Assembly (NCBI GenBank): GCA_965649825.1
Contig: OZ287703.1
Location: forward strand, 1 to 64,000
Source: Penicillus capitatus
Lineage: Eukaryota; Plantae; Chlorophyta
Direction: 5' to 3'
Length of the DNA: 64,000 nucleotides
A program made the position numbers and the translations under genes. Under the pieces are notes generated by a model. The model searched no databases. It was not told the DNA's origin and worked only from the letters and a program-made list of their open reading frames with translations. Below are positions 1 to 57,614 of this stretch, in pieces (within the stretch, counting starts at the first letter, position 1; every line of letters begins with the position of its first letter).

Positions 1-1698
1 CATCATGCCGCCGAGCAGGGACACATAGAGGTCGTTCAGGTGAGCATTGGACGAGTTTTCTGCGTCCACTAGACCGCTCGCTTCTAGGTTCTTCTGGAAG
101 CCGGGGCGAATGTTAACGTCAGAAACGAATTCGGACTGGGGCCGCTTCACTTAGCCGCCGAAGGAGGACATACAGATGTCGTCCAGGCGAGGACCGAACG
201 TTATAGTACGTCCACTCACTCAGTCGCGTTCAGGCTCTCCTGTCGGCCGGGGCGATTGTCGATGCTACTACCGGTCGAAGAATAACACCGCTTTACTTAG
301 CAGCCGCAAACGGACATCTGGAGATTGTTCAGGCGAGCTTTGGACGCGTTTTTACGTCCATTAGACGGTTCGCTTCTAGGTTCTTTTGGCAGCCGGGGCG
401 AAAATCGACGGTGACCGCCGGCATAAATACACACCGCTTCATTATGCCGCCGAACACGGAGACGTAGAGGTCGTCCGGGTGCTCACCTGAACGCCATTGT
501 GTGTCCACTAGTTCGCTCGCTTCTAGGCTCTTTTGGCAGCCGGGGCTAGTGTCGACGCCTTAAGCTTCCTTGTATTCACAGCCCTTCACTATGCCGCCAT
601 TGAAGGACACACAGAAGTCGTTCAGGTGAGCACCGAACGCCAATGTACGTTCAGTAGCTCCATCACGTCTAGGCTCTCTTGTCGGCCGGAGCGAGTGTCG
701 ACGCCGTAGACGACTACGACTCCACACCACTTCACTTGTCCGCCAAAAAAGGACACACAGAAGTCGTTCAGGTGAGCACCGAACGCCAATGTACGTCCAG
801 TAGCTCCATCACGTCTAGGCTCTCTTGTCGGCCGGAGCGAGTGTCGACGCCGTAGACGACTACGACTCCACACCACTTCACTTGTCCGCCAAAAAAGGAC
901 ACACAGAAGTCGTCCAGGTGAGCACCGAACGCCATTGTGCGTCCACTAGATCGCTCGCTTTTAGGCTCTCTTGTCGGCCGGATCAGACATCGACGCCTTA
1001 AACAGAAATGCATGCACACCGCTTCATTATGCCGCCGAACACGGATACATAGAGATCGTCCAGGTGAGCACCGAACGCCAATGTACGTCCAGTAGCTCCA
1101 TCGCGTCTAGGCTCTCTTGTCGGCTGGAGCGAGTGTCGACGCTGTAACTGGCGACGAAGAGACACCACTTCACTATGCCGCCGAAAAAGGACACACAGAA
1201 GTCGTTCAGGTGAGCATTGGATGCGTTTTCTGCGTCCACTAGACAGCTTGCTTCTAGGCTCTTCTAACAGCCGGGGCGAATATTGAAGCTGTGGGGCCTG
1301 AGGGAACCAGGCCACTTCACTTTGCAGCCCGTTTCGGACATCCGAAAATCGCTGAGGTGAACATTGGACGCCATTGTGTGCCCACTAGATCTATTGCTTT
1401 TAGGCTCTCGTGGCAGCGGGGGCGGCTGTCAACTCTCTAAGCACAGCCGGATATACGCCGCTTCATGTAGCATCGGCGTACGGAAACTTGGAAATCGCGA
1501 CAGTGAGTCGTCATGTTTCATTTTGGCACCTAAATCTCTTTTCAGGATCTCATCAACGCTGGGGCATCAAAGTCCATCGCCGCGAATCATGGAGAATTGG
1601 CTGTCGACCTCGTCTGCAACATGGCCGGCGGTCCTTACTCTCCCAGCCCATGTTCCGATGATACTCGCGCCAGCCTTATTGACCTGTTGAAGATCTGA
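1..1698 (+). CDS. ANK1: ankyrin-repeat cassette gene, 5'-truncated by the window edge (at least 11 cassette exons plus a C-cap exon)
   Basis: Introns such as 40-87 and 187-233 separate 99-nt exons (88-186, 234-332, ...) that translate to ankyrin units, e.g. [33 protein letters not shown]. The last exon reads [10 protein letters not shown]...DLVC...[15 protein letters not shown] with TGA at 1696-1698. Confidence 0.9.
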
Positions 1699-11973: not shown

Positions 11974-13417
11974 TCAGGGAGTCAACAGCTCAATGAGGAA
12001 GGCTTCAGTAGCCTCGGAACAGCTGGTGCCAGAAGCTTCGCAAACGAGATCAACAGGCTTCTCTCCGGAGCTCGTCACACTCGACGTCGATGCTCCGGCA
12101 GCAACAAGATCCTGGAAGGAAGCTCAGGCAATAAAGGGAGGTCATCCACTCACTACTGCGAACTGCGAAAGCCCCTTGTGCGCTGCATAGTGAAGCGGCG
12201 TCCATTGGTCTTTGTCAGCGGCGTCGACGTTTGCCCCGCCAGTTAGCAGCACCTGAAGACATAGAGACCGTCGAAGAGATTAGCGAAAAGGCTTCGAGTG
12301 TTCACCCAGATGACTATCGTTCTTCTGTTAAGCACTGCATAGTGAAGTGGTACTTTTCCGTATCTGTCGACGGCATCGATGTCCGCCCCACTGTCCAAAA
12401 GGACCTGGAAACACAGCATCGAAAAAGGAAACTGCGAGAACGCTTAGATCGCCCACTTCAGCGATATCTTTGTGTCCTGCACGCACTGCCAAGGTAAGCG
12501 GTGTCGATCGATAATAAGTTAGCTCTTTGACATCAGCCATATGAGCAAGGAGAACCTAAACGCGATGGGTCGATTGGAGAAACACAGGCGTCAGCATGTT
12601 CACCTCGACGACCTCCAAAGGGCCATAGTACGCGGACAGGAGAAGCGGTGTCCATCGATTTGTTTTGGCAACAGCGTGGACATTGACCCCGGCCTCCAGG
12701 AGAGTCTAAACGCTATGGATCGAGTGGACGAAGAACAAGCGTCCCGTGCTTACTTCGACGATATCTGCGTGTCCCTTCATGGCTGCATAGTGAAGCGGCG
12801 TCATTCCTTCTTCTTCGTCGACGGAATCGACACACGCCCCGCCAGCCAAGAGTTCCTGTGTACATAAGATATGTTAAGCAACAGCAAAACACCTCCGTCG
12901 AGTACTCACCTTGACCGTCTCCAGTTTTCCGTCGCGCGCTGCCTCGTGAAGCGGTGTCAACTCGTTTGCCGAGGGATTCTTGACGTCGACTTCTTCGTCG
13001 TTGTGAGCCTGTGAGACAAGAGCCCGTCGAAACATTGTTCGTGCTGCGACAACCGTACTGCATTGTTCGCCTTGGCACAATCGCGCGAAGCAGCGAATTC
13101 GCCGTTCTCTGCAGAACGAGACAGTTGTGCCGAGCAGAGCACAGTGGAGACCTTACCGTGCAGCGACTCTTCCGTCTTCTAGAGGGGAACGCACTCACAG
13201 CACGTCGTTGTATGCAGAATTACGAGCGAAGCTTACCGTGGCTTCGCGTTTAACGAACCCGTTGATCGTGGCCTCTGGGCTGCGACGCTCTGCCAAAGCA
13301 CGAGAAAAGGTCAGCTGCGAAGACATCCGTGCATTGCCGACCTTGGCTGCCGACAGACGGATGCGGTCCGCAGATCAGCAGCCACAACGAAACGAAGAGC
13401 AGCCACTGTCTCGTCAT
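11974..13417 (-). CDS. ANK2: predicted secreted ankyrin cassette protein (signal exon, linker exons, N-cap, 5 cassettes, C-cap)
   Basis: Spliced model [25 protein letters not shown]|ERRSPEAT...|...[19 protein letters not shown]| then 5 cassette exons |DLVAAGAST...[25 protein letters not shown]. All introns GT-AG and frame-consistent. Confidence 0.85.
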
Positions 13418-20576: not shown

Positions 20577-21862
20577 TCAGCGCTGCAGCAGTTCCGTGAG
20601 GAAGGATCGAGTACATTCAGAACACTTGGCGTCCGATGAATTGCAGATGACGTCGAAGGGGATTTCTCCATCGTCGCTGGCGATCGACTTTGACGCCCCG
20701 ACATAGACAAGACCCTGAGAAGAGATTCAGAGAGTAAACGAAACATAATCACTCACTGTCGCGATTTGCAACTGTCCGGCATACGATGCTAGATTGAGCG
20801 GTGTCCATCCGTAGTTGTTTTCGACGTCGACACTCGCCCCGCGAGCCACGAGAGCCTGGAGAAACGTGAGCAGTCGAACGGACGAAGAAAAGTATCTAAT
20901 GCTTACTTGAACGATTTCTGCATGTCCGTAACGCGCTGAGTGGTGAAGCGGTGTCCATTGTTTGTCGTTTGCGGCGTTGACATTCGCCCCGGCCTCCATG
21001 AGAGCCTAGAGCGAGAGATATAGGACACAAAAAGAGACGTTCAGTGCTCACCGATGCAGCTTCTGTCTGCCCGTAATGGGCAGCCGTGTGAAGCGGTGTC
21101 CATCCTTCATTGTCTATGGCGTAGACACTCGCGTCATGCGCGAGAAGGACCTAAACGCGATAGACAGTGTGGACGAAAAAGGCATTCAATCCTCACCCAG
21201 ACGATATCTGTGTGTCCGTGACGGGCTGCATAGTGAAGCGGTGTCCATCCGTCTTCGTCGTCGGCATCGACATCCGCCCCATTGGCCAGAAGTTCCTGAA
21301 GACACAAGATAGGTCAAGTGAAAGCAAAAACGCGTCTGTCTGTCTAGCGCGCACCTTGACCCTGTCGGTTTGCCCGTCGCGCGCTGCCTCGTGAAGCGGT
21401 GTCAACGCGTTTGCCGAGGGATTCTTGACGTCGACTTCTTCGTCGTTGTGAGCCTGTGAGACAAGAGCCCGTCGAAACATTGTTCGTGCTGCGACAACCG
21501 TACTGCATTGTTCGCCTTGGCACAATCGCGCGAAGCAGCGAATTCGCCGTTCTCTGCAGAACGAGACAGTTGTGCCGAGCAGAGCACAGTGGAGACCTTA
21601 CCGTGCAGCGACTCTTCCGTCTTCTAGAGGGGAACGCACTCACAGCACGTCGTTGTATGCAGAATTACGAGCGAAGCTTACCGTGGCTTCGCGTTTAACG
21701 AACCCGTTGATCGTGGCCTCTGGGCTGCGACGCTCTGCCAAAGCACGAGAAAAGGTCAGCTGCGAAGACATCCGTGCATTGCCGACCTTGGCTGCCGACA
21801 GACGGATGCGGTCCGCAGATCAGCAGCCACAACGAAACGAAGAGCAGCCACTGTCTCGTCAT
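20577..21862 (-). CDS. ANK3: predicted secreted ankyrin cassette protein (4 cassettes)
   Basis: 5' exons nearly identical to ANK2; four 99-nt cassettes (ELLANG, VLLAHD, ALMEAG, ALVARG); C-cap ...[24 protein letters not shown]. Confidence 0.85.
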
Positions 21863-33600: not shown

Positions 33601-34660
33601 GTGCAGTGTCATCTAGACACCCTCAACCTCTCTGCAGGAAAGGACCAACGACGACCGAAGCTCCCGCGCTTGCGGCCACCGCACACCACAACTGCTGGCC
33701 AGTGTGGTACCTGCAGATGGAAAACTATCTGAAGACAGGTCGATGTCCCGATGACGCCAACCCCCAGTGCCAACACTTTGCCCGCCACGATTCGCCCGTC
33801 GCGCAGTCATTGAATACGTGGCAACCTATGAGGCAGTGCGTAGGCATGGACGTCATCGACCCCATGAAGCCTGACGGCTCCTCAAACTATATCATCGCCG
33901 CAGTGAACCTCTGCGCACGATTTTGTCTTCTCTCGGCATCCTCGCAAGCCAAAGCGACATCCACCATCAGACTGCTCGAGCGCTGGACAGCCCTTTTCGG
34001 CAACCCCGAGTGTCTGCAGACAGACAACGATTCAGCGCTCGTAGGCAATCAGTTATCCAATTGGATGTCGGCCCGAGGAATTCAACGCCGCACCATCCCG
34101 TGATCGCACCATCCTGTGATCGCACCATCCTGTGATCCCAATGCATAGGGACCTCCGAGCGTCTCAGCCGAGACGTCATCCGCCGTCCACACTGCCTTCA
34201 AAACTCAAGGCAAATGGACATCAGCTCTTCCCCAGATTCAGGCACTGCTAAACGCGCTTCCGAACTCGGTGACCAAACTCAGCGCCGCACAGACCGCTTT
34301 CGGTTCTCAACCTCGCACGCACTTCATTCCCGCGCCACTCACTTTCACCGCGCCCTTCTTGCACCTCGTTGGACCGCCATCGATCACCAGATGCAGCACC
34401 AGCAACCACACCAACAACTGTCCCACTCTCACCGTTGCTCCGACATCCTAGTCGGCTCCCTCGTGCTGCTTTTTGACAATCAACACGCGCAGACGCACGG
34501 CAACCAGCTTCCTCCGCAGTGGCTCGGACCGTAGACGATTCACGATACATTTTCTTCCTAACGTTACCGTTTCGTTTCTTCTTCTTCCAAGAAACCCTTT
34601 CTCGCACATCGCGATCATCTACGACGTTTTTTCAATCGGAGTTCAGCGCAGGGAAGCGAT

Positions 34661-34909: not shown

Positions 34910-37813
34910 ATAGGACGTCGAGTCTTGTCAGCTGTGTTGAAGCTGCGAAGATCAACTGTCCGTTCTCCTTTGCAAGGAAAGGAAGAGTGGCAGTCAAGGA
35001 TTTTAGATTCCGAATCTCGGTGATGAGATTCGTATCCTGAACGTCTCCTGGTTCTCCTGTAATTCTCAACTCAGTCAGCCCCGTCAAGAACTTCAAGAAG
35101 ACCAGAAAATCGGAACAAGTAAAACGATTGGTCAGTCTAACGGACAATGACACTAATACTGCCAGGATTCTGAGCCTGGTTCAAGTTGGTTGAGGAGAAG
35201 AGGCCACTGTACAGATCTCCCGATGCCGAGATGTCTGAGGTTCCTCAACGAAGACATACAAGACCCAAGCAACGTTTCCACGAAGCCGCCGTCTTCGTCC
35301 GCTATCTTCTCCACCTCGAGCGAAACCGTGGAGTTTGGAAATGTGTCTGTGAACGCAGGTATGTTGTCATCCAAGGAGAGCTTGAGTTTCACGGGGAGCT
35401 GGTTACAAACTTCGCACCACATGCGACAGACGCGACGGCATTCGTGGAGTCCGCTGTCGACAAGGTGAACGAGAATCTTCGACAGGAAGTATCTCTGCGA
35501 CAGGAGGTCTGCTATTCCCTCGTCAGCGGACATCTCCGTGACGGACACGGTCAGCGGAACAAGAAACGAGATGACCCTTAGAGACGGCGAGAACTGAAAA
35601 GACCAATGCTGCACTACGGCAACCCGTCTGTCTGTGCGTTAGATTCGACTGCCGCGTTGTCGATGACATGACTTCGTTGCATCCGAAGGAGGATTTCTCA
35701 GTCGTGTCTCCTTTTCTGCGAGTCGAGTGACGAACACAAGCGAAATGCATGTGCTGCGCAAACAAACCCAAAGCTTGTGTCTGATTCAAGTGACAACGGT
35801 GTATCCAGAGCTTCAGACATGCGTCGTTCACGGGATGATCATGGAAACTGGACGGAGATGGTGTCTTCAGCCATCGTCTTGATAAGAGCTTCAGCATACC
35901 GGCCAGACGTGAGTGGACAATGAAATGACAGCGGCCGGCTCGAGAGAGAACTGAGTCTCGGAGTGGCGAAGGGCGAGAACTGAAGCTGGACTCCCGGAGC
36001 GCGACTGCTGATAGAACTCGGCCGTTGAAGACTTTTCGCGGTCCGCGATTGGCCGAGGGATGATTCTGAAACCTCCTCTCTGAGATTAAACCGAGTTCGT
36101 CTTGTCTCTCTACCAACACAATTCGACATTTTGCCGCTTGTCGAACCCATCTTATTCGAGAAGAGGGAACGAATTGTCGAGTCTGCTTCACGCTGGTCGA
36201 CCGGTGGCAAACGTGTCACGCTTGCTACGCGTGGCCGCGGTTGCAGTACATGAACCTCCTACCAGCGCACGATCGGTTTGACCGAATCGTCTGGCGACGA
36301 CGCGTATTGGCTGCTCCACGCGGCCACTTGAGGACCTCGACGTTGGCTGTCTGGACATCCAGTATCAGTCTAGACTAGTTGAGTGGCGCGACCGGCATTG
36401 TGTAAAAACTGGAACTTGATGAAGCGTTCGACCTTTTCCCTGGTTCTGGCTCTGAAGGAACGGCAAAGACGTTGCCGAATCGGAAAGAGATCACAGCAGG
36501 GTGGCGGCTGGTACGAGTATCGTGTTGGATGCGTCTGCAATGTATGGATCGACGCGGCGACGCTTGACAATTGCAGTGCTGCGAACAAAAGATGATAGAT
36601 ACCCTTTAACCCAAAACAATGGACTTGAAAAATAAAGCCACGAAGAACTGAAACAATGATAATTAAGCAAGCATGCCCCTATGTCTGTCCCATGGACCAA
36701 TCTGTCATCAAGATTATGCGTGTCTCGAAGAAGAAGTGTATCGATGGTTACGATACGCGTCGTTTGGTGTTTCGGAACGGGAGGTTTCGGCAGTTCGATG
36801 CGAGAACGAATGACGAGGATAAGGAGCAAAGGTAGACAGAGTTGCGTAGCGAGCTCCGTGACGTGACATTCGCCTACTGTGACGTGACGTCGACGCGGAT
36901 ATCAGTTTGTTTCTCCCGTTTACTGACCACCTGGCACATCTTCTCACTCTTTATAAAAGGGAGGTATCACACGGCGATGAATGCAGTGTTATGATCGTGC
37001 TCTTCGCAACTGCAAGCTAGTTTTGCGTTTGGTTCCTTCCTGGGAAGCCCTTTCCTAGTTATCACCCTGCTGTCTTAAGGACAGAACTTGCCGAGCCTGA
37101 TTGCCTTTGCCAAGTTGCACTCCTCCAGGCCTTCGTCATCTCATCTATTCTTTTATTTGTGGAGTTTTGAGCGGATGCGAGTTTCTGCTCATCGCATCAA
37201 TGCCGAGAATTTTAACGATGGCAGGCATTTGGCGCTGTGTTGTTTTGAAATGGCCCAGAATCTGGTGCATGGAAAACAGAGCAGTCAGTTTTGTGAGCAG
37301 AAACACTCTTCCCTTTGCAACATCGTTTAGTCTGTGTAAGGGACTCTTTATATCTCTTGTCTGATCTGCGCTCGACGGACAGAGGACATCGGAAGCTCTC
37401 ATCACCGTAATGCGTTGCCTCGCTTACTGAGTGAGAAATTGACTGACCTCCAGTGTCTTGTGTTCTTCAGGAAGTCAAGAATGCTTATCAGATGAACCGG
37501 GTTGACTTCAGAACTTGAATCGTGCGAACATGGACCTCTTATCATCATTGCAGTCTATCAGGGAGAGAACCCTAACACAGCACAGCACAGCAGAGGATGC
37601 AGATGACAGGTGGCTGGCAGGCGAAGACGCATCGTGTGGCACAGACATGTCTTACGATGCAGTTACGTAATGGCCTTTTGCAGTCGGTGGGTCCATCTTG
37701 GTACGATGCGCATGCATAAAAGGCCAGTCGCACCGTCCATTCGTCCATTTCACGTTTCGACTGCAGCCAGCACTGCACTCTTCTACCGTCTGTCAGCGCG
37801 CCGCACTCGGAAG

Positions 37814-40716
37814 ATGAAAAAACTCGATCTTCTCTTCGTTTCGTTGTGTCTGTTGATCTACGGACCGCATCTGTCGGTCGGTAGTCACGGTCGGCTAAAC
37901 ATGGATTTCTTCGCAGCTGACTCTTTGTCGTGCTTTGCCAGAGAGTGGTCGTCCAGAGGCCATGTCCACCGCGTTCGTCGAGCGCGAAATCACGGTGAGC
38001 TTCGCTCGTCATGCCGAATGCGGCGACGCGCTGTGACTGCCTCGTGCCCTAGAAGACGGAAGACTCGCTGCATGGTGGACGCTCCACTGTGCCCAGTGCG
38101 GCAGAACTGTCTCGTTCCGCCGAGAACGGCGGATTCGCTGCCTCGCGCGACTCTGCAAAAACGAATACTGCGGTACGGCTGTTGTACCACGAACGCTGTT
38201 GTGACACTTGTGTCCCATGACAGTGTCTTACTGATGACAAGGAAAACGTCGAGAATCCCTCAGTCAACCAATTGACACCACTTCACGAGGCAGCGCGCGA
38301 CGGACGAACTGAGGAGGTCAAGGTCAGCACTAGACGGACACGTTCTGCTGTTACCCAACCAGTATTGTCTGCGTACGCAGGATCTCGTGTCGGCCGTGGC
38401 GAATGTCGACGCCGTAAGCGACGAGCACGAATACACACCGCTTCACTATGCAGCCGAACGCGGACATCCGGAGATCGTTCAGGTGAGTATTGAACGCGTT
38501 TTTGCGCCCATTAGACAGCTCGCCTTTAGGTTCTTCTGGCAGCCGGGGCGAATATCCACGCTGTAGATGTGGATGGAAATACACCGGTTAACATTGCCGC
38601 CAAAGAGGGACACAGAGATGTCGTCCAAGTTAGTATTTGACGCGTTTTCTGCGTCTGTTAGATCCGTCGCGTTCAGGATCTCCTGGATGCCGGGGCGAGT
38701 GTGTCGTTCCCACGCCGTGCTCTGAGAACACCGCTTCACTGTGCAGCGTACGGTAACCATCCAGAGATTATCCAGGTGAGCACCGAACACCTTTTCTGCA
38801 ACTGTTAGATCCATCGCGTTCAGGATCTCCTGGATGCCGGGGCGCACATCGACTCCAAAGAGAGGGGGACTGGAAACACACCGCTTCATTATGCCGCCAA
38901 AGAGGGACACACAGAGGCCGTCCAGGTGGGCACCGAACGCCATTACGCGTTCACTAGCTCCATCGCATCTAGGCTCTAGTGTCGGCCGGCGCGGCTGTCA
39001 ATATTGCTAACAGGGAAGAAGACACACCGCTTCTCATTGCCGCCGAAGAGGGAAACGCAGAGGTCGTTCAGGTGAGCATCGGAAGCGTTCTCTGCGTCCA
39101 CTAGACGGCTCGCTTCTAGACTCTTCTGACAGCCGGGGCGAAAATCGACGCAATAAGCAGATGGGGAGATACACCGCTTCACATTGCAGCCCATTTCGGG
39201 CGTCTGGATGTTGTCCAGGCGAGCACCGGTTGCCATCACCCGTTCACTAGCTCCATCGTGTTCAGGCTCTCGTGTTGGCCGGGGCGACTGTCGACGCCTT
39301 AGGCTACGACGGAGATACACCGCTTCACATTGCAGCCCATTTCGGGCGTCTGGATGTTGTCCAGGCGAGCACCGGTTGCCATCACCCGTTCACTAGCTCC
39401 ATCGTGTTCAGGCTCTCGTGTTGGCCGGGGCGACTGTCGACGCCTTAGGCGACGACGGAGAAACACCGCTTCACTATGCCGCCGAAGAGAGACACAGAGA
39501 TGTCGTCCAGGTTAGCATTGGTCGCGTTTTTGTGTCTGCTGGATACAACGCCTCTAGGCTCTCGTGTCGGCCGGGGCGAACGTCAACGCCTTAAGCGAAT
39601 GGAACGGTACACCGCTTCACCGTGCAGCGTTTGGTGGCGATCCACAGATTGTCCAGGTAAGCATTGGACGCGTTTTTGCGTCTGTTAGATCCATCGCGTT
39701 CAGGATCTCTTGGATGCCGGGGCGTATTTTAACGCCACCGACGCAGGGAATGGAACACCGCTTCACATTGCAGCGTTTGGCGGCCACACAGAGGCCATCC
39801 AGGTGAGCACGAAACGCTATTGGTGTCCACCAGCTCCATTGCGTCTAGGTTCTCTTGTCGGCCGGTGCGGATGTCAACGCCGCGGACAGGATGGGGGATA
39901 TACCGCTTCACCGGGCCGCCGACGGTGGAGACACAGAGGCCGTCCAGGTTAGCATTGGACGCGTTTTTGCGTCTCTTGGATACATCGCGTCTAGGTTCTC
40001 TTGTCTGCCGGTGCGTATGTCAACGCCGTAGGCTATGAAGAATACACACCGCTTCACTATGCCGCCAACAGGGGACATGCAGAGGTTGTCCAAGTAAGCA
40101 CCGAACGCCATAGTGCATTCATTAGCTCCATCGTGTCTAGGCTCTTCTGACGGCCGGGGCGACTGTCGACGCTCTAAGCGAGGACAGATGGACACCGCTT
40201 CACCGAGCAGCCTGTTTCGGAAATCAGGAGACCGTTCAGGCGAGCACTGGACGCGTTTTCTGCGTTCACTAGATGATCCATTGTATCTAGGCTCTTCTGG
40301 GAGCCGGGGCGAACATCAACGCTGTAAGCGACGGGGGATGGACACCGCTTCACCGAGCAGCCGATTTCGAAAATCCGGAGACCGCTGCGGTGAGCATTGG
40401 ACGCGTTTTCTGCGTTCATTAGACCGATCGCGTCTAGGCTCTTCTAGCAGCCGGGGCGAATGTCGACACTGTAAACGACGATGGATATACACCGCTTCAT
40501 ATAGCATCGTCTATCGGAAACCTGAAAATCGCGACAGTGAGTCGTCAAAGTTCATTTACCGCCTAAATCTCTTTCTAGGATCTCGTCAACACTGGGGCAT
40601 CAAAGTCGATTGCTGACAAAAATGGAGATTTGCCTGTCGACCTCGTCTGCGTGTCTACGTACAACGAGTGTTCTGAATGTACTCGATCCTTCCTCACGGA
40701 ACTGCTGCAGCGCTGA
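37814..40716 (+). CDS. ANK4: predicted secreted ankyrin cassette protein (15 cassettes)
   Basis: Exon 1 at 37814-37889 ([25 protein letters not shown]), 52-nt intron 37890-37941, linker and N-cap exons, 15 cassette exons 38381-40536, C-cap exon 40579-40716 ending [10 protein letters not shown]. Confidence 0.88.
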
Positions 40717-41860: not shown

Positions 41861-42031
41861 CAAGGCGGCGATATCACTCAGGTGTCGAGTCACGTCAAGT
41901 GCGAACTTCCAAGAGGGGCCGCGTAGAGCAGGAGTTTGAATTCGCAGCTACGGATTGAATCCACAGCGATTTTTCAACAGTCCGTCGCGTTTCCGTTTCG
42001 GATTCGTCTGTTAAACCCTATCGAATCACCG

Positions 42032-43882
42032 ATGGGGTGGTTACATTCAAAACGGATTTCCCAACGCGCAGACAGCAGACGCCTACCGCAGTCTGAAGAG
42101 TCCGCCAGCTCGGAAGATGCGCAGAACAGCGTCGAAAGTCCAACCATGACAGGAACGGACACGACAAGGACACTCGGGGTTCTCCTGGATGAGTACGAGG
42201 ATGTGCTGCTCAAGACTCTAGAATGCGTTATGGAAGACGGCCTTCACGAGTGCCGCCTCGTTTGTCGCCGCTGGCGGGACGCTTGTCGTCGACTGCCCGT
42301 CACCATTCAACCAGGTATCGCTTTCGACGCATCCAAAGTGGTGAAGGCGGCGGCGGAGCGATTCCCAAACGCAACAGCTCTGCGTCTCGGAGAATGGCGA
42401 CGCCGAAAAGATCCATTGGATGAGGATTCGATGCGTTCGCTGCAACGACTTGAGAATCTGCGCACATTGCAGATGCGCTTCATGGGAGAGCGTCCGGCGG
42501 CGGAGACGCTGCTTTCCACTCTGTTGTCGATGCGGCTTCTCCGATCCCTTTCGTTCAGTTTCAAACGCAAAAGCGACTCCTCTGCATGCATCGCCATCCT
42601 GCAATACCTGACGCAGCTCACTTCGCTGCATCTCCGAGCACCTACTATCATACGAACGCATCTGGAGCCGATTACTGAGCTCCAGGGACTGCTGAACTTG
42701 ACCGGCGATTTTCATCTGTTGGTCACTTTTGGCGATCGCCTCATCTTCCCTTCACTGACCCGACTCACGGCGCTCACAGTCTACTGGATCTGCACGCGTC
42801 AGAATAGAGAAAAAAGAACACAGTTGCGAGTGATGATCCACTCTGATGCCAGTTCTTGTGGGATCTCGTGTGTTGTGTAGACGTTCTTGCCTTACGCTGC
42901 TCAATTGAAAACATTGGACTTCCGAAAGCAAGCGTGCGATCCTCCGTTTCAAGACTGGCCCTTGCTGAGAGCGTTTTCGAGACTGAAGACGCTTAAACTA
43001 CGGCATTTAAATTTGGAAGTTGACGATTTCTACACAACCCTCTCGGACATGACTAGACTGACCAAACTGGAAATCGCCTTTCGAAACGCCGCCGCCCGGC
43101 CCATTATGGTTTCCGTGCTCTCCCTCACCCAGCTCAACTCACTTCTCCTCGATCGTGTTTGGGGTGAGGACGTCACATCAGAAATGATAGAAGCCATCAC
43201 AGGCATGGTGCAGTTGACGCGTTTCGCGTTGACACCGTCCATGGTCGGAGATTCCTTGAGCTGCCTGACGAAGCTGGTCGATCTCAAGATCGTTGGCTAC
43301 GGTAACTTTACGACGGACCTGTCGGACACTCTTTCCTCCTTGCGTCATCTGACGTCCCTTCACGTCTACAAGTCGGGCCAGAAGTGCATGCTGGCGTCCT
43401 CCGCACTGCAGCAACTGACAGAACTCAGGGTTTTGAATCTGTGGGAGATAGACACGGAATCAGATCTTCTCCAAGTACTGACAACGTTGCCGTGCTTAAC
43501 GGAACTGAGCGTCATCTCTTCTTATAACTGCGATCCTGGAGATTGTTTCTTTGCCCAGCTCTTACCGTTCTCCAATCTGACGGTGCTGGGAGTTTCGCGC
43601 CGTTGGGGGATGTCAAAGACACGGATTGAATCGCTCGGGAGATGTATGCCGAGGATCCAGAAGATCCAATTCCTCTCACACGATGGCGCGTACAAGAAAA
43701 ATTACAAAGAAGAAGTGGCGTTAATGGAGAACTCCATGAACTGGTCGGATCTGGCAGATGCGTTTCCATGCCTTCGCCGTATCCGTCTCGTTTTCGTCCG
43801 CAACTGTCTGCGTCCATATCGTGAGTATTTAATGTTCTCAGAAATCGACCTCTTCTGCAAAGAACTGCAAAACGATGATTGA
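42032..43882 (+). CDS. FBL6: F-box/LRR protein starting MGWLHSK
   Basis: F-box LLDEYEDVLLKTLECVMEDGLHECRLVCRRW; ORFs 41936-42880 and 42887-43882 joined by a short intron. Confidence 0.85.
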
Positions 43883-44719: not shown

Positions 44720-45045
44720 TCAAGGAGTCAACAGCTCAAGGAGGAAGGATCGAGTAGCATCGGAACAATTGGCATCCGGATAACTACAAACCACGTCGAC
44801 AGGGAATTCTCCTTCGTCGTTGACAAACGACTTTGATGCCCCAGCGTCGACGAGATTCTGAAAAGAGATCTAGGCTGTAGATAGAAGCTATTGACTCACT
44901 GATGCGACTAGTGAACGTCCGCGAGACAATGCTACGTGAAGCGGTGTACTTCCGTCAGTGGCAGCAGCTTCGACATTCTCCCCGGCCACCAAGAGAGCCT
45001 GCAACACCGCAAAAAGTCCAGCCAGATGCGGTACCGGACGATGCG
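44720..45045 (-). pseudogene. ANK5: truncated ankyrin gene remnant (last cassette plus C-cap)
   Basis: 99-nt cassette 44900-44998 (ALLVAGENVEAAATDGSTPLHVALSRGRSLVAS) and C-cap ...FLLELLTP*. The upstream part is replaced by retroelement debris, and a homologue of the ANK 5' flank survives at ~46830-47160. Confidence 0.75.
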
Positions 45046-45249: not shown

Positions 45250-46017
45250 TGTCAGTGGACAGCTGTCCACCTTCGTGCAGCTGTCCAAAGAATTACATAA
45301 ATTCTAACATTTAATGTACAAACAGTCTTTGTAAGCTTTACGCCTTCGTCGTTAACTCGTCCGTTCAAACACGACATGGTTTCGGAGCGACAAAGATTCC
45401 GGCGATAGAATCCCGTCATCGAAGAATGAAGACTTTCCAAGACACGTCCGTGGTGACAGCGTTCTACCTACCACCTGCAGTCTGTAGTTCGTTCCATCGT
45501 CCGAGTTGCTGCGTTTCAGTTCCATTGTCCGAGTTGCTGCGTTTCAGTTCCATCGTCCGAGTTGCTGCGTTTCAGTTTCACGCTGCGATAAGCGTACTGT
45601 TGCGCATTGTTGTGTTTACGTTCGTTGTTACTTTGTCTGTGTTTACGTTTTCTATCTGGGTCATCACGGACGTGTTGTCGCTGTGAAGTACGGTTCAAAT
45701 TTCCAGAGTCGGCGTTGAAGTCTCAGAGACATAAGAGCTACAAAGCTGCGGTGAATGGGCCGCAGAGGGAGAAGCCACGTGACGATGGCCCTGGCTCGAC
45801 TCCTGGCCAGCCTGATGACATCCCGACTGTCATGAAATGTGTTCCGTTCGCATCATTCGGAGTCTGCACAACGGAAAGGGGGTGGGCACATGTCAGTGGA
45901 AAGCTGTCCACCTTCGTGCAGCTGTCCAAAGAATTACATAGATTCTAACATTTAATGTACAAACAGTCTTTGTAAGCTTTACGCCTTCGTCGTTAACTCG
46001 TCCGTTCAAACACGACA
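45250..46017 (+). mobile_element. TRIM (terminal-repeat retrotransposon in miniature), 768 bp
   Basis: 127-bp TG...CA LTRs at 45250-45376 and 45891-46017 (2 mismatches), TSD CTGG, PBS TGGTTTCGGAGCG at 45377-45389, purine tract GGAAAGGGGGTGGG, non-coding interior with three ~27-bp repeats. Confidence 0.88.
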
Positions 46018-47560: not shown

Positions 47561-48046
47561 TCAGATCCTCCCCGTTTGCTCTGAGGATTCTGGAAGGGAT
47601 CCGGAAACAGGACCTGCCACATGGCGCTGTCCCGTTGGGTGCATTGGCAATTCGGACAGCATTTCTGTCTCCCTTGCCTTCAGCTCTCTCGCTTCTTGAC
47701 ACTGGGCACAGAGATGGCACCAGAAATGCACGCAGCAGTCGGTACACGGTCCTTCAGGCAGCCCGTACTTGACGCGGAGCATGCGTCTTCGCTCCATGGC
47801 CAAGAAGCACTGGCAGCCGAAGCAGCAGCACCCGGTGAGATTGCCACACAGCCAGCAGAGAAACCCATAGGCGGCGAAGTCGACGAGGTAACGAGGTCCG
47901 GAATCGCCAGACAGTCTTCGGCCGTTTTCGGCATAGAGCAGACAGGGTATCCAACATCCTATGCAGCACGTTTCTCGATCTTCCATGCAACCATAAAGAC
48001 GGAAGCGCCAGTCTTGTCTTGAAGGGTTCAACGGAGCGTATTCCAT
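47561..48046 (-). CDS. PLAC8-family cysteine-rich protein
   Basis: Single exon with W...LYGCMED..TCCIGCWIPC.LY..N, CCCFGCQC, R..LR.KYGLP..PC.DCCVHFWC..CA.CQE.RELK, which is the PLAC8 pattern. Confidence 0.9.
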   Translation of the reverse strand: MEYAPLNPSRQDWRFRLYGCMEDRETCCIGCWIPCLLYAENGRRLSGDSGPRYLVDFAAYGFLCWLCGNLTGCCCFGCQCFLAMERRRMLRVKYGLPEGPCTDCCVHFWCHLCAQCQEARELKARETEMLSELPMHPTGQRHVAGPVSGSLPESSEQTGRI

Positions 48047-48710
48047 GTTAGCGACTTAAGAACACGAACAGCTGACCAAACGCAGTCAATATAAGGGTAT
48101 GCCGAGAGTAGTACACCAGCAGCTGCTCCTCCGCGGCACGATGCTGCCTCGTGGATGATCCGCGGGTCACGTCGAATGCGTGTTCGGTGGACTGGACACA
48201 TCTATTCTATCTGCCATCCATTCACGCTGCATGACTAAGGCAAACGTCGCATCGGATTGTTTCTGTTTGGCAGGAACGGTTTTTTGAATGTGGACGATTG
48301 ATCGAATAGGTGTAACCAAACCCTGGAGACGGTTTCGGTTCAGATGTCCAGTTCATCTGCAATGCACTCGATCTGGGTATCCTTTCGGTTCGCTGAAAGG
48401 AGTGAAGCCTCACAAATCGTCAAGATGCTTCTCACTCTTCCAAGATCGACACGAAGCGAAGGTATTTATTTCTCCGAAAAAGTTACTTAAAGAGACGGAC
48501 ACCGAATTCCAACAGCATAAATGGATGACGTGTTTTCAGACTGCGGGCAGTGCTCCCTACGCACTAAGCAATTCGGGAAAATGGCCTCGTTAGACAAACC
48601 AACCCCCTCAGCGACGCTGCCGAAGATGCAGCTCGCAGGTCCGAAGAAAGAAAGACTGAACCTGTTCTCAGGGCCAAGCGAAAACGGAGACGAATAAGGT
48701 TCCAGGGAAC

Positions 48711-54200: not shown

Positions 54201-57000
54201 GAGAAACGGCGGAACTCTCACTGTATTGCATGTTTTCCTCTAAAATCGTAGATGACGGAATACGGGAACTCCATTCGACTCAATGACACAACAGAGGTCG
54301 TCTGGCCAGGGTCGACAAGCGAAGTTGCGGACTCGCGTGGTCGACTTGTCACAACTTTCTGGCGCCGGAGATGTGAAAATACATCGTTATGCTTTTGTTT
54401 TCAAAACACGTCGCAACTGTGGTTTGACGGACGGATGAATGATCGCTCTTGCGGCAGTGTCATCCGAGAAGAGCACTCGATGCGCATTGTGTCAGGGAGC
54501 ACAAACACCACGTGCATGACAGTCACTCGTTTGCCAGGCCTTCTAAGGAGGATCGTAGCCATCGATGAAGGCTTCATCGTTTTGGCAGTAGCCGGCAGCG
54601 CTCAGCTGCGAGAAGACTGAACCACAGACGAGGGATTCCACGTGCGTTGGTCTACTGCACGTCAACGCAAACAGTGTCGGTAGAGCAGTCGAAGAGAGAA
54701 GACGCGTTGGCGCGACGCTCGGCGAGATTCACTAACCCCCTTTGTTGATTCAATACCGTCCAGATTCGCACAACCCGAAAGACTGAACTTCTTCCAGAAA
54801 TCTGCCACCCCATTAAGACTTATAAACGAAAGAGGAACGCTAGTGAATGGCACAGTGCGTTCCCTTAGGTGCGGATGCACCGAGACTCCTCACACAAGGA
54901 GGATCTGTCGAAAAATGTAAATGATGCATAACCCAATGTGTTTGTTACCACTGACACAAAAAACAGATTCAATAATGTTTATGCTTATGACAATGTCCAA
55001 CAGAATGGCGGAGTTTCATTAACACTTTTTAACTCTGCTAGACAAATAAGCAGTGTACCATGCAGAGTGTCGTTGTACGAGACTTTTCAGAAAAGAACGA
55101 TACTGTAGATCTGAGTAATGGTTGGATCCAAGGTGCATCAGATCTTCAACAGGTCAATAAGGCTGGCGCGAGTATCATCGGTACACTCGATGTCCGTGTA
55201 AGGAACGCTGACAGCGTTGCAGACGAGGTCGACAGGCAAATCTCCATTATTGTCAGCAATCGACTTTGATGCCCCAGCGTTGATGAGATCCTGAAAAGAG
55301 ATTTAGGTGCCAAAACGAAACATGACGACTCACTGTCGCGATTTCCAGTTTTCCGAAATACGATGCTGCATGAAGCGGTGTATATCCGTCGGTGCTTAGA
55401 GCGTTGACAGCCGCCCCCGCTGCCAGGAGAGCCTAAAAGCAATGGATCTAGTGGACGCACAATGGCGTCCAATGTTCACCTCAACGGTTTCCCGATGTCC
55501 GCATTGGACTGCCATGTGAAGTGGCCTGGCTCCCCCAAGCCCCGCAGCTTCAGCTTCAATATTCGCCCCCGCTGCCAGGAGAGCCTAAAAGCAAGCTGTC
55601 TAGTGGACGAAGAAAAGTATCTAATGCTTACTTGAACGACTTCTGTGTGTCCTTTTACGGCGGCAAGGTAAAGTGGTGTCTCTTCGTAAATAGTTACAGC
55701 GTCGACACTCGCTTTGGCCGACAAGAGAGCCTAGACGCGATGGAGCTACTGGACGTACATTGGCGTTCGGTGCTCACCTGGACGATCTCTACGTGTCCGT
55801 GTTCGGCGGCATGATGAAGCGGTGTCTCTTCGTCGATATCTACAGCGTCGACACTCGCTTTGGCCGACAAGAGAGCCTAGACGCGAGCGATCTAGTGGAC
55901 GTACATTGGCGTTCGGTGCTCACCTGGACGATCTCTACGTGTCCGTGTTCGGCGGCATGATGAAGCGGTGTGTAATCATTTGGGCCTAAGACGTCGATGC
56001 CTGCTCCGGCCGACAAGAGAGCCTAGAAGCGAGCGATCTAGTGGACGTACATTGGCGTTCGGTGCTCACCTGGACGATCTCTACGTGTCCGTGTTCGGCG
56101 GCATAATGAAGCGGTGTGTAACCATATCTGTTTAAGCCGTCGACTTTCGCCCCGGCTGCCAGAAGAGCCTAAGAAGCGAACCGTCTAATGGACGCAGAAG
56201 AAGCGTTCGGTGCTCACCTGAACGACTTCTGTGTGTCCTTTTTTGGCGGAAAAGTGAAGTGGTGTGGAGTCGTAGTAACCTACGGCGTCGACACTCGCTC
56301 CGGCCGACAAGAGAGCCTAGAAGCGAGCGATCTAGTGGACGTACATTGGCGTTCGGTGCTCACCTGGACGATCTCTACGTGTCCGTGTTCGGCGGCATAG
56401 TGAAGGGCTGTGTATACTTGGAAGCTTAAGGCGTCGACACTAGCCCCGGCTGCCAAAAGAGCCTAGAAGCGAGCGAACTAGTGGACGCACAATGGCGTTC
56501 GGTGCTCACCCGGACGAGCTTTACGTCTCCGTGTTCGGCGGCATAATGAAGCGGTGTGTATTCATGCCGGCGGTCACCGTCGACTTTCGCCCCGGCTGCC
56601 AAAAGAACCTAGAAGCGAACCGTCTAATGGACGTAAAACCGCGTCCAAAGCTCGCCTGAACAATCTCCAGATGTCCGTTTGCGGCTGCTAAGTAAAGCGG
56701 TGTTAATCCTCGACCGGCAATAGTATCGACAATCGCCCCGGCCGACAGGAGAGCCTGAACGCGACTAAGTGAGTGGACGTACTATAACGTTCGGTCCTTG
56801 CCTGGACGACATCTGTATGTCCTCCTTGGGCGGCAAAGTGAAGCGGCCTCCATCCGTATTCGTTTCTGGCGTTAACATTCGCCCCGGCTGCCAGAAGAAC
56901 CTAGAAGCGAGCGGTCTAGTGGACGCAGGAAACGCGTCCAATGCTCACCTGGACGATCTCTACGTGTCCGTGTTCGGCGGCATATTGAAGTGGTGTCCGG
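51240..57000 (-). repeat. Inverted segmental duplicate of ~1-10850 (without Gypsy-1)
   Basis: FBL7/FBL1, the spacer and the ANK6/ANK1 cassettes are collinear in reverse orientation. Confidence 0.85.
51486..53187 (+). CDS. FBL7: F-box/LRR protein, uninterrupted paralogue of FBL1
   Basis: ORFs 51486-52322 and 52303-53187 joined by a ~52-nt intron near 52215-52266. The start codon is uncertain because the family-like MRFAHS start just upstream is in another frame. Confidence 0.8.
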
Positions 57001-57614
57001 TTTCCGGAGGTTACAGCATCGACATTCGCTCCGGCTGCCAAGAGATCCTACATACACAGACAATACTGGTTGAGTAATTGCAGAACGTGTCTGTGTAGTG
57101 TTAACCTTGACCTCCTCAGTTCGTCCGTCGCGCGCTGCCTCGTGAAGTGGTGTCAATTGGTTGACTGAGGGATTCTCGACGTTTTCCTTGTCATCAGTAA
57201 GACACTGTCATGGGACACAAGTGTCACAACAGCGTTCGTGGTACAACAACCGTACCGCAGTATTCGTTTCTGCAGAGTCGCGCGAGGCAGCGAATCCGCC
57301 GTTCTCGGCGGAACGAGACAGTTCTGCCGCACTGGGCACAGTGGAGCGTCCACCATGCAGCGAGTCTTCCGCCTTCTAGGGCACGAGGCAGTCACAGCGC
57401 GTCGCCGCATTCGGCATGACAAGCGAAGCTCACCGTGATTTCGCGCTCGACGAACGCGTTGGATATGGCCTCTGGACGACCACTCTCTGCCAAAGCACGA
57501 CAAAGAGTCAGCTGCGAAGAAATCCATGTTGAGCCGACCGTGACTACCGACCGACAGATGCGGTCCGTAGATCAACAGACACAACGAAACGAAGAGAAGA
57601 TCGAGTTTTGTCAT
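55138..57614 (-). CDS. ANK6: predicted secreted ankyrin cassette protein (12 cassettes)
   Basis: Exon 1 [25 protein letters not shown]; 5' exons nearly identical to ANK4; 12 cassettes (one of 105 nt), several homologous to ANK1; C-cap ...[13 protein letters not shown]. Confidence 0.88.

What the first reader, a model, noticed from the sequence alone, without database searches (positions are those of the whole stretch)
37814..37941. The ankyrin genes carry a hidden signal-peptide exon, predicting secreted, anchorless ankyrin proteins
Seen: all four complete copies start with a 76-nt exon ([32 protein letters not shown]..., and [25 protein letters not shown] twice). It is followed by a 52-nt GT-AG intron with a CTGAC branch motif and a pyrimidine tract. 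Removing that intron places this exon in frame with the ankyrins in both sequence types, whereas the unspliced frame never reaches the ankyrin frame. The C-cap has two conserved Cys (DLVC...C) and no TM or GPI-like tail. Established: ankyrin repeats are mostly intracellular, and the n/h/c layout with V-G-S fits a Sec signal. Inference: extracellular, antibody-like binders.
Basis: partly seen in the sequence, partly recalled or inferred. Interest (0 to 1): 0.82.

Follow-up and report, generated by a model that had tools for sequence, protein, structure and literature searches.

The report
Signal-peptide first exon on ankyrin genes
A family of ankyrin-repeat genes in an unidentified eukaryote from a metagenome really does begin with a short spliced exon that looks like a secretion signal, so the proteins probably enter the secretory pathway; this kind of protein is already known from plant-pathogenic protists.

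Summary
All four complete ankyrin (ANK) genes in the window start with a 76-nt exon followed by a 52-nt GT-AG intron. Removing that intron joins the exon in frame to the ANK repeats. Comparison of seven copies (four in the window, three on related contigs) supports a translated exon:
- It is the only frame open in every copy.
- The amino acid stays the same while the codon varies at 9 codons, against 1 and 5 in the other frames.
- Type B has a stop codon just upstream of the ATG and no other usable start.
- A TATA-like box sits at -99 in all copies.

The peptide has the classic n/h/c layout, an invariant G-P and an invariant SVGS cleavage motif. No transmembrane segment, GPI-type tail or KDEL-type signal follows. 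One cysteine pair in the C-terminal cap is conserved in 9 of 10 caps.

The limits are these. There is no transcript evidence, no trained signal-peptide predictor was available, and the donor GTCGGC departs from the local consensus. The organism is unidentified. "Antibody-like binder" remains speculation. Secreted ANK families are already described in plasmodiophorids and oomycetes, so I class this as a new, orphan member of a known kind. Interest is moderate.

The parts
37614..37813 (+). Conserved promoter / 5'UTR block of gene A1, with a TATA-like CATAAAA at 37715-37721 (-99) and no ATG between it and the start codon
   Evidence: 84% identical between types A and B, which is higher than the exons. 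The TATA-like element is at -99 in all 7 copies, and -3 is A.
37814..37889 (+). A1 exon 1 (76 nt): [25 protein letters not shown] plus the first base of the next codon; predicted signal peptide
37890..37941 (+). A1 intron 1 (52 nt, phase 1): GTCGGC donor, CTGAC branch-like motif, pyrimidine-rich tract, CAG acceptor
   Evidence: the length is not a multiple of 3, and it is 51 nt in the L003 copy
37942..38322 (+). A1 exons 2-4 (53, 120 and 99 nt) with introns 2 and 3: an acidic, probably disordered linker followed by the N-terminal capping ANK repeat
   Evidence: Exon lengths are identical in all copies. The AF2 model of B2 has pLDDT below 50 for residues 23-47.
38381..40536 (+). A1 ANK array: 15 exons, each one 33/34-residue repeat, separated by phase-0 introns of 46-51 nt
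40579..40716 (+). A1 last exon: C-terminal cap [45 protein letters not shown] plus stop codon, with the conserved Cys pair
55138..57614 (-). Gene A2 (564 aa, 17 exons); exon 1 at 57614-57539, intron 1 at 57538-57487
11974..13417 (-). Gene B1 (328 aa, 10 exons); exon 1 at 13417-13342, intron 1 at 13341-13290; in-frame TGA at 13423-13421, two codons upstream of the ATG
20577..21862 (-). Gene B2 (293 aa, 9 exons); exon 1 at 21862-21787, intron 1 at 21786-21735
1..1692 (+). 3' part of a fifth family member, cut by the window edge (ANK array and C-cap with the Cys pair). A 94.5%-identical relative on another contig (L008) has the full gene, including the signal exon.
44744..44998 (-). 3' relic of a sixth member: one ANK repeat plus the C-cap with the Cys pair, with no 5' module

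Best explanation
Exon 1 is the true first coding exon of a lineage-specific ankyrin-repeat gene family. Transcription probably starts about 30 nt downstream of a conserved TATA-like box at -99. The first ATG opens a 25-codon exon. A 52-nt U2-type intron is then removed, joining this exon in phase 1 to exon 2.

The encoded N-terminus is a cleavable ER signal peptide. It has a basic n-region and an 11-12 residue hydrophobic core. An invariant G-P break follows, then an invariant S-V-G-S motif, with cleavage after G23 or S24.

The mature protein has three parts: an acidic linker of about 70 residues, a solenoid of 5-17 ANK repeats, and a C-terminal cap. The two invariant cysteines of the cap can close the loop between its two helices.

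With no transmembrane segment, GPI-type tail or KDEL/HDEL, the protein is most likely released as a soluble protein outside the cell or into a lumenal compartment. There the variable concave ANK surface would bind some partner.

Shown here: the gene structure, the frame logic, the coding signature and the signal-peptide-like features. Inferred: splicing, cleavage, secretion, the disulfide and binding.
For: Gene structure:
- The exon/intron architecture is identical (76/52/53/58/120 nt) in two sequence types that are 72-84% identical.
- The only indels fall in introns: intron 3 is 51 versus 50 nt, and intron 1 is 51 nt in L003.

Coding signature of exon 1:
- Frame 0 is the only frame open in all 7 copies.
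- 9 codons vary while the amino acid is invariant, against 1 and 5 in the other frames. Variable sites at codon positions 1/2/3 are 5/9/13.
- pN/pS is 0.36-0.55 in frame 0 against 0.7-4.6 in the other frames. For spliced exons 1-4 it is 0.5 against 0.9-1.3.

Start codon:
- Type B has a TGA two codons upstream of the ATG and no other ATG until the second ANK repeat.
- The exon-2 ATG of A1 is ATA in A2 and ACG in L008g and type B.
- The TATA-like box is at -99, no ATG intervenes, and -3 is A in all copies.
- The unspliced frame ends after 153 codons (A) or 55 codons (B).

Signal-peptide features:
- n-region net charge 0 to +1; uncharged core of 11-12 residues with mean Kyte-Doolittle 2.5-3.0.
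- Cut sites compatible with the (-3,-1) rule at 23/24.
- Only 9 of 935 ATG-initiated open frames in the window pass the same filter.

Rest of the protein:
- No later hydrophobic segment, and hydrophilic C-termini.
- The Cys pair is conserved in 9 of 10 known C-caps. L008g's mature protein has only these two Cys.
- The AF2 model shows an N-terminal helix (residues 2-16), a disordered stretch (23-47) and an ANK solenoid with pLDDT above 94. Cys272 lies in cap helix 1. Cys279 lies in the loop before cap helix 2 and Cys282 at its first turn.
Against: - There is no transcript or proteome evidence. The spliced protein and its N-terminal 99 residues have no match among 5.8 billion predicted proteins, and two scans of JGI metagenomes found nothing.
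- The intron-1 donor GTCGGC departs from the family consensus GTGAGC at +3 and +4.
- The signal peptide was judged with my own heuristic, not a trained predictor.
- In type A the exon-1 frame stays open upstream, with in-frame ATGs beyond the TATA-like box.
- The copy in the related assembly (L003) looks decayed: its intron-2 donor is ATAAGC, tblastn shows a frame change in exon 3, and its C-cap has no Cys.
- Two short family members on L004 lack exon 1.
- B1 and B2 have an odd number of Cys in the mature protein.
- Most ANK proteins are cytosolic (general knowledge).
Confidence: 0.62

Rival explanations
1. Exon 1 is a real signal peptide, but the proteins are effectors. After secretion they enter, or act on, the cells of a host, partner or prey and bind cytosolic targets there, as proposed for the secreted ANK families of plasmodiophorids and oomycetes. 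They would not be extracellular 'antibody-like' binders.
For: - SP+ANK proteins form the largest secretome cluster in Plasmodiophora brassicae and Spongospora subterranea, and PbANK1 binds host MPK3 (PMC12503489).
- Secreted ANKs are reported as an expanded effector family in oomycetes (PMC11139960).
- The genes here lie in a duplication-rich, retrotransposon-rich, recombining region and evolve fast: pN/pS is about 1 at framework positions and about 2 at binding positions for A2 versus L008g.
- The source is a metagenome, so an associated lifestyle is possible.
Against: - The organism and its lifestyle are unknown. The only named P450 relatives are from green algae: Caulerpa at 41% and Chlamydomonas at 29%.
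- I saw no conserved translocation motif (RxLR/PEXEL-like) when reading the linker sequences (models).
- A conserved cap Cys pair suits an oxidising, extracellular environment better than a host cytosol.
Confidence: 0.2
2. Exon 1 is not part of the coding sequence. Either it is an upstream ORF or a 5'UTR element, or transcripts start downstream, and the ANK proteins are ordinary cytosolic proteins. The conservation would then reflect promoter or UTR function.
For: - The upstream 200 nt are even more conserved than exon 1 (84% against 78%), so nucleotide conservation alone does not prove coding.
- The intron-1 donor is off-consensus.
- A1 and L007g have an in-frame ATG in exon 2.
- L004 copies lack exon 1 but keep an open frame into exon 2.
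- There is no expression evidence.
Against: - Type B, A2 and L008g have no ATG in exons 2-4, so no start would exist for them.
- The third-position and synonymous substitution pattern is specific to frame 0.
- Amino-acid replacements keep the core hydrophobic (F/C, S/M, I/V, C/W), and G-P and SVGS are invariant.
- Exon length and phase are strictly kept.
Confidence: 0.1
3. The hydrophobic N-terminus is an uncleaved signal anchor, so the ANK domain is tethered to a membrane (type II topology) rather than released.
For: The n-region is positively charged. Cleavage has not been shown.
Against: - The uncharged core is only 11-12 residues and ends at an invariant G-P break. That is too short for a typical 18-20 residue membrane span.
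- The best 19-residue Kyte-Doolittle mean is 1.4-1.75.
- An invariant SVGS motif with small residues at -3 and -1 follows at the usual distance.
Confidence: 0.06

Closest known systems
Secreted ankyrin-repeat effector candidates of plasmodiophorids (Plasmodiophora brassicae, Spongospora subterranea; e.g. PbANK1)
   Same: - An N-terminal Sec signal peptide followed by an ANK solenoid.
- Large, fast-diverging, lineage-specific families.
- Secretomes also rich in LRR proteins, and genomes with short (about 60 bp) introns (PMC4471660, PMC12503489).
   Different: - No sequence relationship outside the ANK repeats was detected: the N-terminal 99 residues have no hit at all.
- No BTB/SKP1 domain here.
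- This family has an acidic linker of about 70 residues and a Cys pair in the C-cap.
- The organism is unidentified, and its only named P450 relatives are green algae.
Secreted ANK effector family of oomycetes (Phytophthora sojae ANKs; PMC11139960)
   Same: Signal peptide plus ANK repeats; expansion by duplication in dynamic genome regions.
   Different: - Oomycete genes are intron-poor (own knowledge). Here every repeat is a separate exon.
- No oomycete hits appeared in the P450 search.
- No homology of the N- or C-terminal modules.
Consensus-designed ankyrin repeat proteins (DARPins) and natural ANK binders such as gankyrin
   Same: - The predicted fold superposes on DARPins and gankyrin at 0.6-2 A rmsd, with up to 52% identity.
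- The family's variable positions coincide with the positions randomised in DARPin libraries.
   Different: DARPins and gankyrin are cytosolic or made in E. coli and lack cysteines in the caps (own knowledge). This family carries a signal peptide, a linker and a conserved Cys pair in the C-cap.
Variable lymphocyte receptors of jawless vertebrates (functional analogy only; own knowledge)
   Same: A signal peptide, a solenoid repeat array of variable length with hypervariable concave-surface positions, and cysteine-containing caps.
   Different: VLRs are LRR proteins assembled somatically and are GPI-anchored or secreted. Here there is only germline paralogue diversity with recombination between copies, no evidence of somatic assembly and a different fold.
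Bacterial ANK effectors (type IV secretion substrates of Legionella, Coxiella and Anaplasma; sponge-symbiont ANK proteins)
   Same: ANK repeats exported to act on another organism.
   Different: Those are prokaryotic, intronless, and exported by type IV systems (own knowledge; cited in PMC4471660). Here the genes are eukaryotic, with spliceosomal introns and a Sec-type leader.

Membership tests
Ankyrin repeat proteins (Pfam PF00023 / PF12796) | Tandem 33-residue repeats that match the Ank profiles above the gathering score | tested here: met
   B1 scores: Ank E=3.2e-45 (150 bits against a cut-off of 21.1) and Ank_2 E=1.3e-41. AF2 solenoid pLDDT above 94. Foldseek top hits are DARPins, gankyrin and AnkB.
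Spliceosomal U2-type GT-AG intron (intron 1) | GT...AG termini; a branch-like motif 18-40 nt upstream of the acceptor followed by a pyrimidine-rich tract; a length within the local intron range | tested here: met
   GT/AG in all copies. CTGAC (CTAAC in L007g) sits about 25 nt before the CAG. The length, 52 nt, falls within the 42-58 nt range of the 65 family introns.
Spliceosomal U2-type GT-AG intron (intron 1) | Donor matching the local consensus (GTGAGC) | tested here: inconclusive
   GTCGGC keeps +1, +2, +5 and +6 but differs at +3 and +4. It is conserved in 6 of 7 copies (GTCCTC in L003). Other family introns also tolerate GTACGG, GTGAAC, GTGGGC and GC donors.
Spliceosomal U2-type GT-AG intron (intron 1) | Removal seen in transcripts | not testable with these tools
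   No transcript-derived protein or contig was found.
Cleavable Sec/ER signal peptide | At the very N-terminus of the translated ORF | tested here: met
   It is the first ATG after the TATA-like box. Type B has a stop two codons upstream, and there is no conserved downstream ATG.
Cleavable Sec/ER signal peptide | n-region not net negative, h-region of 7-15 hydrophobic residues, polar c-region with small residues at -3 and -1 | tested here: met
   Net charge 0 to +1. Core of 11-12 residues with mean Kyte-Doolittle 2.5-3.0. G-P break. SVG|S or VGS|H/Q. This is my own heuristic; 1% of ATG-initiated open frames in the window pass it.
Cleavable Sec/ER signal peptide | Positive call by a trained predictor (SignalP/DeepLoc) and experimental cleavage or secretion | not testable with these tools
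Secreted ANK effector families (plasmodiophorid / oomycete) | Sequence homology to those families beyond the generic ANK repeat | tested here: not met
   The N-terminal 99 residues give no hit in 5.8 billion proteins. The full-length query returns only generic ANK proteins at 52% identity or less over about half the query.
Secreted ANK effector families (plasmodiophorid / oomycete) | Producer is a pathogen or symbiont, and the genes are induced during interaction | not testable with these tools
   The organism is unidentified. The contigs come from ENA metagenome assemblies ERZ25074695 and ERZ26696514.
Diversifying binder repertoire (VLR/DARPin-like logic) | Variability concentrated on the target-binding surface, with excess non-synonymous change there | tested here: inconclusive
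   Entropy is 2.82 bits at the seven DARPin variable positions (six randomised plus position 26) against 1.35 elsewhere, over 41 repeats. For A2 versus L008g, pN/pS is 2.1 at the six randomised positions against 1.0 elsewhere, but this rests on 2.5 synonymous changes. Other pairs give 0.7-3.1.
Disulfide-stabilised extracellular domain | Conserved, paired cysteines positioned to bond | tested here: inconclusive
   A Cys pair spaced 6 or 11 residues apart is conserved in 9 of 10 C-caps. It lies at the end of cap helix 1 and just before cap helix 2. B1 and B2 have odd Cys totals.

The most novel reading that the evidence does not exclude
The family is a germline-encoded, recombining repertoire of secreted ankyrin binders with a disulfide-closed cap. 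A constant cassette (promoter, signal peptide, linker and N-cap) is kept homogeneous by gene conversion. Exon-per-repeat ANK arrays are shuffled, duplicated and selected for diversity behind it. This would be an ANK-based counterpart of LRR-based extracellular recognition receptors, used by a protist or alga to recognise microbes or partners outside the cell.
Probability: 0.1. Interest if true: 0.8.

Novelty: new member of a known kind. Interest (0 to 1): 0.4.

Why it matters
If the proteins are secreted, this unidentified eukaryote exports a fast-evolving set of protein-binding solenoids. Such proteins are prime candidates for mediating contact with other organisms, whether as effectors, adhesins or recognition molecules.

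It would extend secreted ANK families beyond plasmodiophorids and oomycetes, possibly into a green-algal lineage. It would also offer a natural ANK scaffold with a disulfide-closed C-cap, which could interest protein engineers who use DARPins in oxidising environments.

There is a practical lesson too. Prokaryote-style gene calling on metagenome contigs misses such genes entirely. Even eukaryotic gene finders could drop a 76-nt first exon that is followed by an off-consensus donor.

Tried and rejected
- **Naive 'longest spliced ORF' dynamic programming** gave nonsense models. I replaced it with donor-scored and then exon-length-guided models, checked by eye. The last exons of A2 and L008g and exon 4 of B2 had to be corrected by hand.
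- **Full-length protein search** was swamped by generic ANK proteins.
- **N-terminal 99-residue search** found nothing.
- **Exhaustive HMMER search with the unspliced 221-aa ORF** found a single cluster. It led to two more copies, on L007 and L008.
- **Two pattern scans of JGI metagenomes** (exon 1, exon 3) found nothing.
- **Loci around two further P450 paralogues** (L005, L006) held no family member.
- **Rfam** found nothing in the window or four loci, and there are no tRNAs, so no RNA marker helps identify the organism.
- **Literature search for the ENA accessions** found nothing.
- **Bipartite plastid-targeting leader: rejected.** The region after the signal peptide is net acidic, with 7-10 K+R against 10-14 D+E.
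- **The 153-codon unspliced ORF as the real product: rejected.** It is cut to 55 codons in type B.
- **ER retention: rejected.** The C-termini are LLQR, LLKI and LLTP.
- **Taxon.** A siphonous green alga is only a guess. It rests on the best named P450 hit (Caulerpa lentillifera, 41%) and on a window GC of about 52%, compared with 52.4% in Ostreobium (10.1101/2020.07.21.211367).
Full report
**What is there**

The window is eukaryotic DNA with about 52% GC and no tRNAs. Besides the ANK genes, it carries:
- two Ty3/gypsy retrotransposons;
- at least eight pairs of F-box-like and LRR ORFs;
- a cytochrome P450 and a PLAC8 gene.

At 37814 an ATG opens a 76-nt exon (37814-37889). A 52-nt intron follows (37890-37941): GTCGGC...CTGAC...pyrimidine-rich...CAG. 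A degenerate 41-nt pattern from this exon finds exactly four sites in the window, at 37829 (+), 57599 (-), 13402 (-) and 21847 (-). Dinucleotide-preserving shuffles give none.

Alignment of the four 5' regions shows two sequence types, A (37814+, 57614-) and B (13417-, 21862-).

**Gene models**

With donor-scored and then exon-length-guided dynamic programming, checked by eye, all four genes give uninterrupted reading frames:

| Gene | Coordinates | Strand | Length | Exons |
|---|---|---|---|---|
| A1 | 37814-40716 | + | 658 aa | 20 |
| A2 | 57614-55138 | - | 564 aa | 17 |
| B1 | 13417-11974 | - | 328 aa | 10 |
| B2 | 21862-20577 | - | 293 aa | 9 |

- The first four exons are 76, 53, 120 and 99 nt in every copy. 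Introns 1-3 are 52, 58 and 51 nt (50 nt for intron 3 in type B).
- After that, almost every ANK repeat is one 99-nt phase-0 exon followed by a 46-48 nt intron, giving the 146-nt period seen by TRF.
- Pfam confirms ankyrin repeats (Ank E=3e-45 for B1).
- Without splicing, the frame from the exon-1 ATG ends after 153 codons (type A) or 55 codons (type B) and never enters the ANK frame.

The window also holds a 5'-truncated copy (1-1692) and a 3' relic (44744-44998, -).

**Is exon 1 really coding?**

No annotation or transcript could be reached.
- The window matches contigs of an ENA metagenome assembly (ERZ25074695). That assembly has only prokaryote-style gene calls.
- The spliced B2 protein retrieves only generic ANK proteins, at 52% identity or less.
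- The N-terminal 99 residues retrieve nothing among 5.8 billion proteins.
- Two pattern scans of JGI metagenomes were empty.

The case therefore rests on comparison. I recovered three more copies that carry exon 1:
- L008g is intact. Its exon 1 encodes [25 protein letters not shown].
- L007g is interrupted after exon 3 near a contig end. Its exon 1 encodes [25 protein letters not shown].
- L003g comes from a second assembly, ERZ26696514. Its exon 1 encodes MTKQGLLCVMLCLLVYGPRPSVGSH.

Across the seven copies:
- Frame 0 is the only frame free of stops.
- 9 codons change while the amino acid stays the same, against 1 and 5 in the other frames. Variable sites at codon positions 1/2/3 number 5/9/13.
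- Pairwise pN/pS is 0.36-0.55 in frame 0 and 0.7-4.6 in the others. Over spliced exons 1-4 it is 0.5 against 0.9-1.3.
- Replacements in the core keep it hydrophobic (F/C, S/M, I/V, C/W). G17-P18 and S21-V22-G23-S24 are invariant.
- Indels occur only in introns: intron 3 is 51 versus 50 nt, and intron 1 is 51 nt in L003.

On the start codon:
- Type B has an in-frame TGA two codons upstream of the ATG.
- A TATA-like CATAAAA or TACAAAA sits at -99 in all seven copies, with no ATG in between and an A at -3.
- The in-frame ATG that A1 has in exon 2 is ATA in A2 and ACG in L008g and type B. Type B has no other ATG before the second ANK repeat.

Together these make exon 1 the only conserved start.

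Points against:
- The donor GTCGGC departs from the family consensus GTGAGC at +3 and +4. Other family introns also tolerate GTACGG, GTGAAC, GTGGGC and GC donors.
- The upstream 200 nt are even better conserved than the exon (84% against 78%), so nucleotide conservation alone proves nothing.
- L003g looks decayed. Its intron-2 donor is ATAAGC, tblastn shows a frame change in exon 3, and its cap has no Cys.
- Two short family members on L004 lack exon 1. Their homology begins in the 3' half of intron 1.

**Is it a signal peptide?**

No trained predictor was available. By my own heuristic, the four distinct peptides scored (A1, A2, type B and L003g) have:
- an n-region with net charge 0 to +1;
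- an uncharged core of 11-12 residues with mean Kyte-Doolittle 2.5-3.0;
- a G-P break;
- cut sites compatible with the (-3,-1) rule after G23 or S24.

Only 9 of 935 ATG-initiated open frames in the window pass the same filter, and these presumably include the four exon-1 ATGs.

The core is too short for a membrane span. No later segment exceeds a 19-residue Kyte-Doolittle mean of 1.49. The C-termini (LLQR, LLKI, LLTP) are neither hydrophobic tails nor KDEL-like.

The region after the leader is net acidic (7-10 K+R against 10-14 D+E). That argues against a transit-peptide-like second targeting signal.

An AlphaFold2 model of B2 (mean pLDDT 81) shows:
- a helix at residues 2-16;
- a disordered stretch at 23-47;
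- two low-confidence helices;
- an ANK solenoid with pLDDT above 94;
- a two-helix C-cap.

Foldseek places the solenoid on DARPins and gankyrin at 0.6-2 A rmsd.

**The cysteine pair**

A Cys pair, with 6 or 11 residues between the two cysteines, is present in 9 of the 10 C-caps known. These are the six in the window, L008g and both L004 copies. The decayed L003 copy lacks it.

The first Cys lies in cap helix 1. The second lies just before cap helix 2. A disulfide there would close the loop between the two helices, which varies in length. L008g's mature protein has only these two cysteines, while B1 and B2 have odd totals. This supports an oxidising destination but does not prove it. The S-S distance could not be measured.

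**Binder repertoire?**

- Within each type, the 5' cassette (promoter, exons 1-3 and their introns) is 96-100% identical, while the ANK arrays differ in number and sequence.
- L008 is a mosaic of three window regions.
- A1 contains a 98%-identical tandem duplication of one exon-plus-intron unit.
- Across 41 repeats, entropy peaks at the positions that are randomised in DARPin libraries (2.82 against 1.35 bits).
- For the closest pair (A2 and L008g), pN/pS is 2.1 at those positions and 1.0 elsewhere. This rests on very few synonymous changes, and other pairs vary from 0.7 to 3.1.

This fits diversification of a binding surface, but the pattern is common in ANK families.

**Comparison with what is known**

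Signal-peptide-bearing ANK proteins are not new.
- They are enriched in plasmodiophorid secretomes (PMC4471660).
- They form the largest structural cluster of the P. brassicae and S. subterranea secretomes, and PbANK1 binds host MPK3 (PMC12503489).
- They were reported as an expanded effector family in oomycetes (PMC11139960).

The present family shares the architecture but no detectable homology outside the repeats. It adds three features of its own: an acidic linker, a Cys pair in the C-cap, and a one-repeat-per-exon gene structure.

The organism is unidentified. The only named relatives of the neighbouring P450 are from Caulerpa lentillifera (41%) and Chlamydomonas (29%). The window's GC matches the 52.4% reported for Ostreobium (10.1101/2020.07.21.211367). 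A siphonous green alga is therefore a guess, not a result.

**Verdict**

- Exon 1 as the true first coding exon: about 0.8.
- Exon 1 as a cleavable ER signal peptide leading to a soluble secretory protein: about 0.6.
- An extracellular, antibody-like repertoire: about 0.1.
- Class: a new, orphan member of a known kind (secreted ANK proteins of eukaryotic microbes). Interest is moderate.

Noticed in passing
window 38381-40536, 55334-57047, 1-1500; 39120-39411: Almost every internal ANK repeat is one 99-nt phase-0 exon followed by a 46-48 nt intron, giving a 146-nt unit. The stretch 39120-39411 is a 98%-identical tandem duplication of one exon-plus-intron unit. This layout allows repeats to be gained or lost without breaking the reading frame.
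   Followed up: partly
window 39219, 39365, 40240 (A1); 56801, 56655 (A2): GC-AG introns (GCGAGC / GCAAGG donors) make up 7 of the 65 family introns. That is well above the roughly 1% usual in eukaryotes, although several are recent duplicates of one another.
   Followed up: partly
window 13417-13059 vs 21862-21504; 37614-38322 vs 57814-57106; L008: Within each type the 5' cassette (promoter, exons 1-3 and introns) is 96-100% identical, while the ANK arrays behind it differ in number (17/14/7/6) and sequence. L008 is a mosaic of window regions 24190-21481, 1-3566 and 20857-12357. This points to gene conversion or recombination among copies.
   Followed up: partly
window 37700-37772 and the equivalent positions upstream of the other three genes: A block of about 60 nt is nearly invariant between types A and B (GGTACGATGCGCATGCATAAAA...CCAGTCGCACCGTCCATTCGTCCATTTCACGTTTC). 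It contains the TATA-like box and a GCATGC palindrome, and is probably a shared core promoter or regulatory element.
   Followed up: no
L004:3037-3750 (+) and L004:12687-11959 (-): Two short family members have about 3 ANK repeats and a C-cap with the Cys pair, but lack the signal exon. Their homology starts in the 3' half of intron 1. Both keep an ATG-initiated frame (MRQRFIL...) that runs through the former intron into exon 2. One has lost the intron-2 donor. They may be leaderless variants or pseudogenes.
   Followed up: partly
L003:1939-3080: The copy in the second assembly (ERZ26696514) keeps an intact signal-like exon 1. However, it has an ATAAGC intron-2 donor, a frame change in exon 3 in the tblastn alignment, and a C-cap without cysteines. 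It is probably a pseudogene.
   Followed up: partly
window 44744-44998 (-); 45491-45577: A 3' relic of a family member (one ANK repeat plus the C-cap) with no 5' module. A 28-nt x 3 tandem repeat lies nearby.
   Followed up: partly
window 3640-4497, 9767-10576, 16778-18626, 24312-26006, 27211-29124, 41936-43882, 51486-53187, 59766-61026: At least eight pairs of adjacent ORFs, one F-box-like and one LRR (weak Pfam F-box and LRR_14 hits), are interspersed with the ANK genes. Each pair is probably one gene with a small intron. Some contain an internal 'MGCVHSK' or 'MGWLHSK' that may be the true start; the MGC form resembles an N-myristoylation/palmitoylation motif.
   Followed up: no
window 4653-9158 (+), 61143-64000 (+), about 30800-34100: Ty3/gypsy retrotransposons. 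One has an intact 1501-aa gag-protease-RT-RNaseH-integrase ORF, a second runs off the window end, and there are degraded remains. The first lies between sequences that are adjacent in the related contig L008.
   Followed up: partly
window 47564-49994 (-); L003, L004: A cytochrome P450 and a PLAC8 gene sit next to each other. The P450-PLAC8-LRR-ANK neighbourhood recurs on L003. L004 keeps the P450-LRR-ANK neighbourhood, but no PLAC8 gene was called there. The P450 has many paralogues on megabase-size ENA contigs. Its best named relative is from Caulerpa lentillifera (41%).
   Followed up: partly
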